From contig CM074512.1 in assembly GCA_037379345.1 (NCBI GenBank), positions 14,942,001 to 15,006,000 of the forward strand: 64,000 nt of DNA, in the 5' to 3' direction. Of the stretch, positions 6,902-21,577 are shown piece after piece (the stretch's first letter is position 1; the number at the start of each line of letters is the position of its first letter). A program made the position numbers and the translations under genes. The DNA is from Perna viridis. Its lineage: Eukaryota. The notes under the pieces are model-generated. The model was not told the DNA's origin. It did not search any database and worked only from the letters and a program-made list of their open reading frames with translations.

Positions 6902-9900
6902 TCACATTGATGTAGACCCTACTTTCTCCTCTTCCAAATCAAATAGCTAAAAACAAAATGTAAAAAAATTCAAATTACAATAAGTTTCTTTGTAATCATT
7001 GTCCTAGCTAGAACTACTACTCATTGAATGATGGACATCAGATATTAGGGTCGATTCATTTTTAAGAAAGGATTCTGAAAGTATAAAAATTATTAACACT
7101 TAAAATAGAAACCTTATCTTCATGGCTTTCGTCACTTGATGTAATATTCAGTGAAGAGGGCAGTCTACATACATGTATTATATTTTTTAGGTCAACTTAA
7201 TTGCTTTCGTGACAGGATGTAACATCCATCGGACGACAGTCTACATAAATATATTACACTACTTACATAAAATAGATATCTCTTCATTGCTTCGTTACTG
7301 GGTGTATCCTTCAACTGAGGACGGTCTACATACATGTATTATACTAACTTCAACTGAGGACGGTCTACATACACGTATTATACTAAACATATGAAATATA
7401 AACTCTTCATCTGTAGACCGTCAACGAAGATGTGGTATCTATATCATGTCATTCATCATTACTGGATGTAACATCCAACGGAGGACAGTCTACATACATG
7501 TATTATACTAAACATATATGGTATAGATACCTCATCTTCATCACTTTCACTACTGGATGTAACATCCAACGGAGGAGAGTCTACATACATTTATTATACT
7601 AAGCACATAAAATAGGTACCTCATCTTTGTTACTTTCATTACTAGATTATCATGCAATTGAGGACGGTCTACATATACTTAACATATGAAATAGATCTCA
7701 TATTCATTGCTTTTATCACTGGGTATATCATTCAGTGGAGTACAGTCTTCATACATGTATTATACTAAACATGTATGAAATAGATACCTCATCTTGGTTA
7801 CTTTCATTCATTACTAGATGCAACATCCAACGGAGGACAGTCTACATACATGTATTATACTAAACATGTGAAAAATACCTCATATTCATTGCTTTCATCA
7901 CTGGGTATATCCTTCAACTGAGGACGGTCTACATACATGTATAATACTAAACTGTAAACATATGAAATAAACATCTCAAATTAATTGCTTTCATCACTGG
8001 TTATATCATTCAATGGAGGGCAGTTTACATACATGTATGATACTAAACATAAAATAGATACCACATCTTCACTGCTTTCACTCAACGGAGGTCTACATAT
8101 CATACTTAGCGTATAAAACAGTTACCTTATCCGTGTTACTCTCTTTCAATATTGGATGTAACATCCAACGGAGGAAGGTCTACATACATATATTATACTA
8201 ACTCTAACGGAGGACGGTCTACATACACATATTATACTAACTCTAACGAAGGTCAGTCTACATACATATATTATACTAACATCCAACGGAGGAAGGTCTA
8301 CATACATATATTATACTAACTCTAACGGAGGACGGTCTACATACATATATTATACTAACTCTAACGAAGGTCAGTCTACATACATATATTATACTAACAT
8401 CCAACGGAGGAAGGTCTACATACATATATAATACTAACTTCAACTGAAGACGGTCTACATACATGTATTGTACTAAATATATGAAATGTAAACCTCATCT
8501 TCATTGCATTACTGGATGGATGTATCATCCAACGGAGGACAGTCTACATACATGTATTATACTAAACATATATGAAATAGATACCTCATCTTTGTTACTT
8601 TCATTACTAGATTATCATTTAACTGAGGACGGTCTACATATCATACTAAACATATGAAATAGATATCTCATATTCATTGCTTTCATTACTAGATGTAACA
8701 TCCAGTGGAGGACAGTCTACATACACGTATTATACTACACACATAAAATATTTACCTCATCTTCGTTTCTTTCATTACTGGATTTATCATCTTGCAGAGG
8801 ACTTTCTATGTTTTCTTGACTTTCCTTCTTTTGTTTTCCGTAATTTTTCCAGTATTCAGCTTTGCTTATTTTGCCATTTTTACCTGAATTTTTGTTACGA
8901 TCTTTTCCATGACCAGCCTTATTTGTGTTTTCTTTGGATTGTTTTTCTGAGTTTTTGCCATAGTTTTTCCAGTACTTTCCTTTGCTGACACTTTTCTGTT
9001 CATTTTCATTGCTCTTATTGTTTTCATTACTCTCTAGTTTTCTGTTCTCTTTTTGATTAGCATGTTCCTTGTAGACTCTCCAGTTGTATGATGGCTTTTG
9101 CTTTTGCTTTCCATAGTTCTTCCAGTAGGCCTCCTTTTGTTTTTTTGTATTAATCTCTTTCGGGTTTTCTTCTGAGATTGACTGATCCGAGCTCCCACTG
9201 GAGGATTCTGAACTTGATTCTTCCTTAAGATAAATATATTTGATATTTAACTCCTTCTGGTTAATTACCATATGATGCTATCTTATCCTTTTTGCAATTT
9301 TCAATCATTTGTTTCTATCAATATGGGTTAAGTTCGATCACGGTTTATTTATTGATAAAAAAAAAATTGATTCGACACGAGTAAGAGCATAATGATGACA
9401 GCCTATCTACAATAAAATGATGACAACGCGAAAAACTTAAGATATATCTTATATACATATTTGGCATACCACAATTGTTTTACTTACTGATGAGTGTTTA
9501 TTTCTCTTTATTTCTGACAAGTGCTGTTGTAATCTGTCTTCTGAGAGCTGTTCGGTGTCTTTAATCAAATGTTTGACCTCTCCTGATTTTACCTCCGTAC
9601 TGTCATCCTCCAAAGACCCACCTTCTACAGGATCCGTCATGTCAATCGTTTCTTCTGGAATCTCCTTCTGTCTTTTTGCTTCTAAAAAAAGGCATTTACA
9701 AGTTTACTTGTGTTACTAAAAAACACGAGCGCACAATAACTCTTGGTCAGAAAAACTCGATCTGACAATGCTGTCACGAATATATGAAAACATTTATTTC
9801 ATGTAGTTTTTGCACATAGTTTTTTATTATTATTATCAACAGCAGCATTTGCTCACAGATGTATTTCTTTTGCCAAACGGTGAAAACTCAAAGTTTTAAT

Positions 9901-21577: not shown

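What the first reader, a model, noticed from the sequence alone, without database searches (positions are those of the whole stretch)
6902..21577. Orphan secreted protein with triple YWKNYGK motif: prohormone-like or adhesive/biomineral matrix protein
Seen: a signal peptide, then long E/D/S-rich and K/N-rich disordered segments, an EESSSESSSGSSDQSISEE patch, and three exact YWKNYGK copies (EAYWKNYGKQK, GKYWKNYGKNS, AEYWKNYGKQK) in otherwise non-repetitive spacers. The model has no Cys. Established: Gly followed by a basic residue is the PAM amidation/convertase signal; S-x-E is the FAM20C site common in biomineral proteins; Tyr/Trp next to Lys is typical of mussel foot proteins (DOPA, cation-pi). 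Inference: exact conservation of only the heptamer suggests selection on a released peptide (x-YWKNYamide) or on a sticker motif in a coacervating secreted protein. I recognise no described family.
Basis: partly seen in the sequence, partly recalled or inferred. Interest (0 to 1): 0.75.

Follow-up and report, generated by a model that had tools for sequence, protein, structure and literature searches.

The report
Orphan disordered protein with triple motif
This is a real, spliced and expressed single-copy gene for a cysteine-free, mostly unstructured protein with three conserved YWKNYGK motifs, but it has only one known relative, and both its function and its proposed secretion signal remain unproven.

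Summary
The motif exon is real. Window 9223-8756 (minus strand) encodes 156 residues with the acidic serine patch and three exact YWKNYGK copies. No 7-mer occurred three times in any of 20,000 shuffles.

Spliced contigs from three runs, plus spliced reads from one RNA run, join six exons (13426 to 6902) with GT..AG introns. The neighbouring satellite is removed as one intron.

The signal-peptide exon (21577-21520) and a candidate second exon (16356-16289) are predictions only. The single reads call was already used.

- **Copy number:** the gene and the motif are single-copy in the genome.
- **Relatives:** one was found among 1.84 billion representative proteins. It keeps K-x-x-[YF]-W-x-N-Y at all three sites, but the glycine is lost in copy 2.
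- **Selection:** the three copies differ only at synonymous sites.
- **Family:** no Pfam, PDB or Atlas match.

My best reading is a probably secreted, disordered phosphoprotein whose aromatic-lysine motifs act as multivalent binding sites. A prohormone reading is weaker, because no dibasic site flanks any copy. The spacing also differs from the bivalve Wx3Yamide peptides.

Earlier notes of this scan describe other orphan disordered proteins in this genome, but not this gene. Interest is moderate to low.

The parts
21520..21577 (-). Predicted exon 1: start codon, a 19-residue signal-peptide-like stretch, and the first base of a split codon. It is not joined to the rest by any RNA I could see.
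   Evidence: The sequence shows an ATG, a 13-residue hydrophobic core and a donor reading G|GTAAGT. GC is 0.50 against 0.37 and 0.28 in the flanks. It is the best of 5 ATG mini-exons with a strong donor in the 18.5 kb up to the next gene, with hydropathy 3.34 against 2.39 or less. It is single-copy.
16289..16356 (-). Candidate exon 2 (68 nt). It is phase-compatible between exon 1 and exon 3, and is a prediction only.
   Evidence: It is one of 175 Cys-free, phase-compatible candidates. GC is 0.47, the acceptor ends ...cattacag and the donor reads GAG|gtaaaa. It is single-copy. Lengths 68 + 58 fit within the 169 nt that the X1 contig holds upstream of exon 3 (my arithmetic).
13240..13426 (-). 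Exon 3 (187 nt, 62 codons plus 1 base). Its C-terminal half is predicted to be helical.
   Evidence: The 3' end is RNA-verified: the loose end of the X1 and X7 contigs beyond 12584 matches 13242-13271 exactly. The 5' acceptor (ttttctag) is predicted, and an in-frame TAG lies just upstream. AlphaFold2 on the single sequence gives mean pLDDT 72, and 85-92 for residues 31-60.
12479..12582 (-). Exon 4 (104 nt), acidic.
   Evidence: Contig pieces and the joint 12157|12479 are seen in X1, X3 and X7 and in 6 reads of X21.
12121..12157 (-). Exon 5 (37 nt), lysine-rich (SPKKVVKKNYKY).
   Evidence: Joints 12157|12479 and 9681|12121. Translation.
9488..9681 (-). Exon 6 (194 nt), acidic, with two KR pairs.
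   Evidence: Joints 9681|12121 (3 contigs, 4 X21 reads) and 9223|9488 (3 contigs, 1 X21 read). The same-species genomic ORF P0002 covers it at 100% identity.
8756..9223 (-). Exon 7, the motif exon (468 nt, 156 codons). It holds the acidic Ser patch, then a Lys/Asn/Glu-rich segment with three YWKNYGK copies and one degenerate copy (NWRVY).
   Evidence: It is single-copy. AlphaFold2 mean pLDDT is 55.
9167..9223 (-). Acidic serine cluster EESSSESSSGSSDQSISEE (residues 1-19 of exon 7), with S-x-E/D sites.
9107..9127 (-). Motif copy 1 (YWKNYGK).
   Evidence: It is identical in the relative P0001.
8954..8974 (-). Motif copy 2 (YWKNYGK).
   Evidence: The relative has FWQNY-K here, with the Gly lost.
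8834..8854 (-). Motif copy 3 (YWKNYGK).
   Evidence: The relative has YWRNYGR.
6947..8755 (-). Intron 7. It holds the locus-specific satellite (about 7105-8790) built from copies of the exon-7 end plus its donor. It is removed as one intron.
   Evidence: The joint 6946|8756 is seen in one contig each of X1, X3 and X7. Tandem arrays of period 39/89/96. All 15 of 15 genome matches to a 221-nt piece lie in this intron.
6902..6946 (-). Exon 8, coding part: 14 codons plus the TGA stop. The 3' UTR continues below 6902.

Best explanation
This is a real, single-copy, lineage-restricted protein-coding gene on the minus strand with about eight exons. Six are shown by RNA and two are predicted. It encodes a protein of about 386 residues with no Cys.

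The protein has an acidic N-terminal two-thirds with a short predicted helical element, an acidic poly-Ser (S-x-E) cluster, and then a Lys/Asn-rich, net-basic disordered segment. Every aromatic residue of that segment sits in four W-[KR]-x-Y sites, three of which are exact YWKNYGK.

My inference is that the protein enters the secretory pathway through the predicted signal peptide and is phosphorylated on the Ser cluster by a Fam20C-type kinase. It would then act as a soluble, granin-like or matrix-associated scaffold. The conserved K-x-x-[YF]-W-x-N-Y motifs would be multivalent contact sites (stickers, or short linear motifs for a partner) set in a charged spacer, rather than peptides that are cut out.

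- **Shown:** the gene structure from exon 3 to the stop, expression, coding constraint and motif conservation.
- **Inferred:** secretion, phosphorylation and the binding role.
For: **Splicing and expression**
- One spliced contig in each of X1, X3 and X7 (1535, 1770 and 1421 nt) joins the exons with GT..AG introns. RNA reads of X21 show three of the joints.
- Of the 20 holder runs, 18 (from 7 studies) hold 0.58-0.63 of the sampled words. The exons alone would give 0.65 by my arithmetic.

**Coding**
- 342 codons stay open across five verified junctions.
- The relative P0001 keeps the frame through in-frame gaps at 42% identity, E 7e-20.
- The 10 pairwise differences among the three 21-nt motif copies are all synonymous (DNA).

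**Motif**
- 0 of 20,000 shuffles match the triple 7-mer.
- The motif occurs only in this exon in the genome.
- 16 of 21 motif positions are identical in the relative, against 50%, 21% and 42% in the spacers and tail. K at -3 and W-x-N-Y are kept in 6 of 6 copies.
- All 12 aromatic residues of exon 7 lie in the four sites.

**Disorder and charge blocks**
- Mean pLDDT is 55.
- Net charges by exon are -5, -5, +5, -6, +7 and -3.

**Signal peptide**
- Exon 1 is the best candidate in 18.5 kb.

**Modifying enzymes**
- Fam20C-domain genes are present: 8 matches over the cut-off, at about four loci.
Against: - No RNA evidence links exon 1 or exon 2 to exon 3, so secretion is unproven.
- The tissue of expression is unknown. 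Depth in the one on-record RNA run is low, about 0.5-1.2 per base from 19% of the run.
- Three or four motifs is a low valence for a condensate scaffold.
- The AlphaFold2 runs used two sequences for exon 7 and one for exon 3, so low confidence is weak evidence of disorder.
- There is only one relative, and its source is unnamed.
- Nothing here shows phosphorylation or binding.
Confidence: 0.4

Rival explanations
1. The protein is a prohormone. Convertases cut at the single Lys three residues before each motif and after the Gly-Lys behind it, and amidation then yields three heptapeptides of the form xxYW[KR]NY-amide.
For: - There are three copies, each followed by Gly-Lys in this species.
- K at -3 is invariant in 6 of 6 copies across the two species.
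- The motif is the best-conserved part, with 16 of 21 positions identical.
- A signal peptide is predicted.
- Cu2_monooxygen (PHM-type) genes are present.
- Bivalves have a W...Y-amide family with three peptides in the scallop precursor (PMC5996578, passage seen).
- Recalled, from no call: Gly-Lys is used as the C-terminal processing signal in a gastropod FMRFamide precursor.
Against: - No dibasic pair lies next to any copy. The only pairs in the exon are KK27, RK61 and KK132.
- From my general knowledge, cleavage at a single Lys is unusual.
- The relative lost the Gly of copy 2.
- Spacer blocks next to copy 1 and the exon end are conserved too.
- The motif string is in none of the full texts searched.
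- The spacing is W-x-x-Y, not W-x-x-x-Y.
Confidence: 0.17
2. The protein is not secreted. The true first exon is another one, and this is an intracellular (for example nuclear) lysine/glutamate-rich phosphoprotein whose acidic Ser cluster is a casein-kinase-2-type site.
For: - The joint of exon 1 to the rest is untested.
- 175 Cys-free, phase-compatible candidates exist for the intermediate exon.
- One ATG exon with a phase-0 donor (19027-18941) could splice directly to exon 3.
- K-rich stretches and an acidic Ser cluster also occur in nucleolar proteins (my general knowledge).
Against: - The 21577 exon is by far the most signal-peptide-like ATG exon upstream. It is richer in GC than its flanks and single-copy.
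- The lengths fit the contigs.
- There is only one acidic Ser cluster, not the alternating array of Nopp140-type proteins.
Confidence: 0.2
3. The protein is a structural component of a secreted biomaterial (byssus adhesive or thread matrix, or shell matrix). Tyr and Trp next to Lys would be modified and cross-linked, and the phospho-Ser cluster would bind calcium or mineral.
For:
- Earlier notes of this scan take the genome for a mussel's. I did not test that.
- Fam20C genes are present.
Against: - Tyr is 10 of 361 residues and Trp is 5, far below what I recall for mussel foot proteins.
- Depth is low in the RNA run laid.
- There is only one copy, no tandem family and only three motifs.
- The supplementary proteome tables of byssus and shell papers could not be opened.
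Confidence: 0.1

Closest known systems
Wx3Yamide neuropeptide precursors of bivalves (Stewart et al. 2014, PMC4200219; Zhang et al. 2018, PMC5996578)
   Same: Both have repeated short peptides with a Trp and a C-terminal Tyr before the amidation Gly. The scallop main text lists three peptides. The function of the family is unknown (PMC8398477, one passage).
   Different: - The scallop peptides end W-[SNH]-I-A-Y-amide, with three residues between W and Y. Here two residues (K-N) lie between them.
- The flanks here lack dibasic sites.
- The precursor sequences are in supplementary files that I could not open, so no alignment was possible.
- A strict W-x-I-A-Y-G-basic DNA pattern gave 4 scattered hits in this genome against 16 for the control. 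No canonical gene of that form was seen.
Granins and secretory calcium-binding phosphoproteins (a functional class; properties recalled, from no call)
   Same: Both are acidic overall, Cys-free or Cys-poor, disordered, carry an S-x-E cluster, have a few KR/KK pairs, and have a (here predicted) signal peptide.
   Different: - There is no sequence relationship to any of them: Pfam gave 0 families.
- The C-terminal segment is net basic (+7) with aromatic-lysine motifs.
- Granule or matrix localisation is untested.
Mussel foot proteins of the mfp-3/mfp-5 type (properties recalled)
   Same: Tyr and Trp sit beside Lys and Gly/Asn in the motif.
   Different: - Tyr is 2.8% here (10 of 361), against roughly a fifth of residues as I recall for those proteins.
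- This protein is long, rich in Glu and Ser, and net acidic.
- There is no gland expression data.
WRKY domain signature WRKYGQK of plant transcription factors
   Same: There is a superficial string likeness to WKNYGKQK. The only papers holding related strings are WRKY papers and unrelated ones (listing only).
   Different: There is no zinc-finger part (no Cys at all) and no Pfam match. I take the likeness for chance.

Membership tests
Multi-copy amidated neuropeptide precursor | Signal peptide on the same transcript | tested here: inconclusive
   A signal-peptide-like exon is at 21577-21520, but no RNA joint to exon 3 was seen.
Multi-copy amidated neuropeptide precursor | Each copy followed by Gly plus a basic residue | tested here: inconclusive
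   3 of 3 copies here (G-K). 2 of 3 in the relative P0001, where the Gly is lost in copy 2.
Multi-copy amidated neuropeptide precursor | Each copy preceded by a dibasic (or Arg monobasic) convertase site | tested here: not met
   The dibasic pairs in exon 7 are only KK27, RK61 and KK132, and none is adjacent to a copy's N-terminus. Only a single Lys at -3 is present, kept in 6 of 6 copies.
Multi-copy amidated neuropeptide precursor | Peptide conserved while spacers drift | tested here: inconclusive
   Motifs are 16 of 21 identical, against 50%, 21% and 42% in the spacers and tail. Blocks WRV.KE, KENRK and SSNE.NEDE are conserved too. Only one relative is available.
Multi-copy amidated neuropeptide precursor | Neural or endocrine expression and detection of the peptide | not testable with these tools
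   Run descriptions are coded and carry no tissue.
Wx3Yamide family | W-x-x-x-Y-amide spacing (scallop: W-[SNH]-I-A-Y) | tested here: not met
   The motif here is W-K-N-Y-G. The scallop peptides were read.
Wx3Yamide family | Sequence similarity of the precursor | not testable with these tools
Mussel foot protein (mfp-3/-5 type) | Very high Tyr content and basic, small protein (recalled) | tested here: not met
   Y is 10 of 361 residues. Net charge is -8 over the seven exon pieces.
Granin / secretory phosphoprotein class | Acidic, Cys-poor, disordered, with S-x-E clusters | tested here: met
   0 Cys and net charge -8. There are 8 S-x-[ED] sites in exon 7, including the 19-residue patch. Mean pLDDT is 55. 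Fam20C genes are present in the genome.
Granin / secretory phosphoprotein class | Secretion, phosphorylation, and granule or matrix localisation | not testable with these tools
   These need proteomics or imaging.
WRKY domain | WRKYGQK strand plus a C2H2/C2HC zinc finger | tested here: not met
   No Cys and no Pfam hit at E up to 10.

The most novel reading that the evidence does not exclude
The gene is the precursor of an undescribed amidated peptide family, xxYW[KR]NY-amide. It would be distinct from Wx3Yamide and released by cleavage at single lysines, from a long granin-like precursor that also carries a phospho-serine cluster.
Probability: 0.15. Interest if true: 0.6.

Novelty: new member of a known kind. 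Interest (0 to 1): 0.3.

Why it matters
If the protein is secreted, it adds one more lineage-restricted, cysteine-free disordered protein to a genome where this scan has already noted several. Its layout is clean and testable: an acid block, a phospho-serine patch, and a basic block with three or four aromatic-lysine motifs.

The motif is short, exactly repeated, conserved in the one relative, and unique in the genome. That makes it easy to follow by mass spectrometry or with an antibody.

It does not open a long-standing question by itself. Its value depends on tissue data that I could not obtain.

Tried and rejected
**Non-coding RNA or a chance ORF.** Rejected, because 342 codons stay open across five verified junctions, the relative keeps the frame, and the differences among the motif copies are all synonymous.

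**A repeat- or transposon-derived exon.** Rejected, because exon 7 and the two predicted 5' exons are single-copy.

**Satellite units used as micro-exons or alternative donors.** Not seen. One 1809-nt intron is removed in three contigs. X21 shows only scattered partial reads in the satellite and one odd 2-read joint.

**A dispersed satellite family that donated the exon end.** Rejected, because 15 of 15 matches lie in this intron, and the relative has the same exon end and the same start of the intron read-through.

**Homology searches that led nowhere.**
- Exon 3 found no candidate.
- Exon 6 found only the same species' own genomic ORF, P0002.
- The profile of exon 7 plus P0001 found only P0001 among 479 candidates.
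- The Atlas gave no usable hit for exon 7, and scores of 0.82 or less to bacterial hypothetical proteins for exon 3.
- The PDB sequence search gave 0.
- These searches saw only proteins of 0.55-1.75 times the query length, except, so longer relatives could be missed.

**WRKY likeness.** Rejected: no Cys and no Pfam hit.

**A canonical Wx3Yamide gene in this genome.** A strict pattern gave 4 scattered hits against 16 for the control, which says little.

**Presence of Fam20C and PHM-type genes.** Both are present, so this does not discriminate between the readings.

**Locating exon 2 by sequence alone.** 175 Cys-free candidates remain. I favour 16356-16289 but cannot prove it.

**Papers.**
- PMC4200219: passages by term search.
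- PMC5996578: passages.
- PMC8398477: one passage.
- PMC6282093, the five papers and the rest: search listing only.
- Supplementary files (the Wx3Yamide precursors; byssus, shell or neuropeptide tables) were closed and may hold this protein.

**Organism.** I did not try to name it. 'Mussel' comes from earlier notes of this scan and is untested here.
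Full report
**What is there**

The window is AT-rich, with GC 0.28-0.38. On the minus strand, the second-longest ORF of the whole window (8735-9271, 178 aa) contains an exon bounded by an acceptor (...cttaag) and a donor (GAG|gtaaat).

Window 9223-8756 translates to 156 residues. 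They begin with the patch EESSSESSSGSSDQSISEE and carry three exact YWKNYGK copies at residues 33, 84 and 124.

- Composition is K 30, S 23, E 22 and N 22 of 156.
- All 12 aromatic residues lie in the three motifs and in one degenerate site, NWRVY.

**Is it more than chance?**

- In 20,000 shuffles of the exon's residues, no word of 7 occurred three times. The maximum was 6, in 3 shuffles.
- A degenerate DNA pattern for the heptamer hits the 723-Mb genome three times, all in this exon. The control pattern hits 0 times.
- The three 21-nt copies differ from each other at 3, 4 and 3 positions, and every difference is synonymous (DNA printed).
- The identity of the peptides is therefore maintained by selection. 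It is not left over from a recent duplication or gene conversion.

**Is it a gene?**

The run search found 20 holders in 8 studies. Two of them hold all the sampled words, and I take those for DNA. The other 18, from 7 studies, hold 0.58-0.63. Words lying wholly inside the two exons of the query would give 0.65 by my arithmetic.

I laid X21 (on record as RNA, raw reads) and the contigs of X1, X3 and X7 on 6860-12850. Each contig set has one spliced contig (1535, 1770 and 1421 nt). It covers 12584-12479, 12157-12121, 9681-9487, 9222-8756 and 6946-6860, with 0 other letters. Every skipped part is CT..AC on the plus strand, which is GT..AG on the minus strand.

| Joint | X21 reads |
|---|---|
| 12157 to 12479 | 6 |
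| 9681 to 12121 | 4 |
| 9222 to 9487 | 1 |
| 6946 to 8756 | 0 |

All X21 reads on the exons have the first mate on the plus strand. By the tool's own note, that fits a minus-strand RNA.

The loose end of the X1 and X7 contigs beyond 12584 matches 13242-13271 exactly and nowhere else in the window. Reading the sequence and allowing for the 1-2 ambiguous letters at the joints gives these exons:

| Exon | Coordinates (minus strand) | Note |
|---|---|---|
| 3 | 13426-13240 | 5' acceptor predicted |
| 4 | 12582-12479 | |
| 5 | 12157-12121 | |
| 6 | 9681-9488 | |
| 7 | 9223-8756 | motif exon |
| 8 | 6946-6902 | then the 3' UTR |

The phases fit, and 342 codons plus two split codons stay open.

An in-frame TAG sits just upstream of 13426, and exons 3-5 contain no ATG. 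The start codon must therefore lie in an upstream exon.

**The 5' end is not shown**

- Its GC is 0.50, against 0.37 and 0.28 beside it.
- It is single-copy.
- Among ATG mini-exons with a strong donor in the 18.5 kb up to the next gene, it is the most hydrophobic of 5 (3.34 against 2.39 or less).

It ends in phase 1, so one more exon is needed before exon 3. There are 175 Cys-free candidates that fit the phase. I favour 16356-16289: 68 nt, GC 0.47, a good donor and single-copy. Lengths 68 + 58 also fit within the 169 nt that the X1 contig holds upstream of exon 3.

None of this is an RNA joint.

**Relatives**

- A scan of 1.84 billion representative proteins with exon 7, with no length limit, found one protein at E 0.001 or better. 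This is P0001: 124 aa, E 9.5e-11, from a 1727-nt Logan contig, alone in its cluster.
- A profile of the two sequences found nothing more among 479 candidates.
- BLASTP gives 42% identity over 146 columns, with in-frame gaps.
- P0001 ends with the same exon end followed by a read-through of the intron start. It is therefore an exon ORF of the orthologous gene in another organism.

In the alignment:
- Copy 1 is identical, including its flanks (AYWKNYGKQK).
- Copy 2 reads KFWQNY-KN, with the Gly lost.
- Copy 3 reads QYWRNYGRE.
- W-x-N-Y and a Lys three residues before the motif are kept in 6 of 6 copies.
- Identity is 16 of 21 in the motifs. It is 22 of 44 between copies 1 and 2, 7 of 33 between copies 2 and 3 (which includes a 17-residue deletion), and 11 of 26 behind copy 3.

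So the motif is the best-kept part but not the only one. WRV.KE, KENRK and the exon end SSNE.NEDE are also conserved.

Exon 3 found no candidate. Exon 6 found only this species' own genomic ORF. Both searches saw only proteins of similar length to the query.

**Family assignment**

- Pfam gave no family for exons 3, 4, 6 and 7 at E up to 10.
- PDB sequences gave none.
- The Atlas gave nothing usable.
- The strings ywkny, wknyg, knyamide and wknya occur in no relevant paper of the library. There were 0 papers. One search gave five unrelated ones: three on WRKY factors, one on mouse promoter motifs and one on bromelain (listing only).

**Shape**

- AlphaFold2 on exon 7 with its one relative gives mean pLDDT 55, with short helices at residues 21-33 and 121-134.
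- Exon 3 alone gives mean pLDDT 72, and 85-92 for residues 31-60, as a helix-turn-helix.
- Both runs used very few sequences and single exons. I did not fold or search the joined protein.
- Summed over the pieces, the protein has E 50, K 50, S 39, N 34, Y 10, W 5 and C 0 of 361 residues.
- Net charge is -8, arranged in blocks. Exons 3, 4 and 6 are acidic. Exon 5 is basic. The first 20 residues of exon 7 carry -6 and the rest of exon 7 carries +13.

**How it most likely works**

Shown: a conserved, expressed, coding, single-copy gene with a selected triple motif in a disordered lysine-rich segment.

Inferred: the protein enters the secretory pathway, its Ser cluster is phosphorylated (Fam20C-domain genes exist at about four loci), and the K-x-x-[YF]-W-x-N-Y sites act as multivalent contacts. 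These could be stickers for self-association between the basic and acidic blocks, or short linear motifs for a partner. I give this 0.4.

The prohormone reading gets 0.17.
- For it: Gly-Lys follows every copy here, the Lys at -3 is invariant, PHM-type genes exist, and bivalves have a W...Y-amide family.
- Against it: no dibasic pair flanks any copy, the relative lost one Gly, the spacers are partly conserved, and the spacing is W-x-x-Y rather than the W-x-x-x-Y of Wx3Yamide. The scallop peptides end W-[SNH]-I-A-Y-amide.

An intracellular protein with another first exon gets 0.2, because the 5' joint is untested.

A load-bearing byssus or shell component gets 0.1. Tyr is only 2.8%, there are only three motifs, and depth is low in the one RNA run.

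**Surroundings**

- The satellite at about 7105-8790 consists of copies of the exon-7 end plus its donor. It is confined to this intron: 15 of 15 genome matches lie there. It is spliced out as one 1809-nt intron in the three contigs.
- The next gene upstream on the minus strand has a FERM_M exon at 38114-38476, with E 1.4e-12.

**Novelty and verdict**

The protein family is undescribed as far as these searches reach. The kind of thing is familiar: a lineage-restricted, Cys-free, disordered, probably secreted protein with a few repeated short motifs. Earlier notes of this scan list several others in this same genome, though not this gene or motif.

Those notes also take the genome for a mussel's, probably the green mussel. 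I did not test that.

I score interest at 0.3. The boldest reading left open is a new amidated peptide family cut at single lysines (probability 0.15).

Noticed in passing
window 7105-8790: A locus-specific satellite (periods 39, 89 and 96) made of copies of the last 35 or so bases of exon 7 plus the splice donor. All 15 of 15 genome matches lie in this intron. It is removed as one intron in three spliced contigs. X21 shows only scattered partial reads there, plus a 2-read backward joint 8041>7492.
   Followed up: partly
window 10535-11300 (inside intron 5): A 21/42-bp tandem array (10535-11145), with joints on opposite strands (10573/11275, 11258/11260). RNA depth is high on both strands, up to 119 in X3. 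A>G and C>T differences are seen in RNA reads at 10583-10604 and 11267-11272. This may be a transcribed repeat family or a hairpin. Reads from other copies elsewhere in the genome could explain the differences.
   Followed up: no
window 38114-38476 (-) and 31981-33843 (-): A neighbouring minus-strand gene. One exon ORF matches the FERM central domain (PF00373, E 1.4e-12). Long Ser/Gln/Asn-rich ORFs of 365 and 146 aa downstream of it have no Pfam match.
   Followed up: partly
window 15213-15494 (+) and 43096-43440 (+): Two ORFs begin with similar peptides (MCPRW...YMLG...), which suggests copies of one repeated element. The first lies inside the long predicted intron of this gene.
   Followed up: no
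window 59564-60325 (+): A 253-aa ORF with a Cys/His-rich tail that looks retroelement-like. It has no Pfam family at E 0.01 or better.
   Followed up: partly
G000:C15:9194826-9204967: Two neighbouring Fam20C-domain matches, each in a long open frame of 499-551 aa without stops. They look like a tandem pair of kinase genes whose Fam20C domain is not interrupted by an intron.
   Followed up: no
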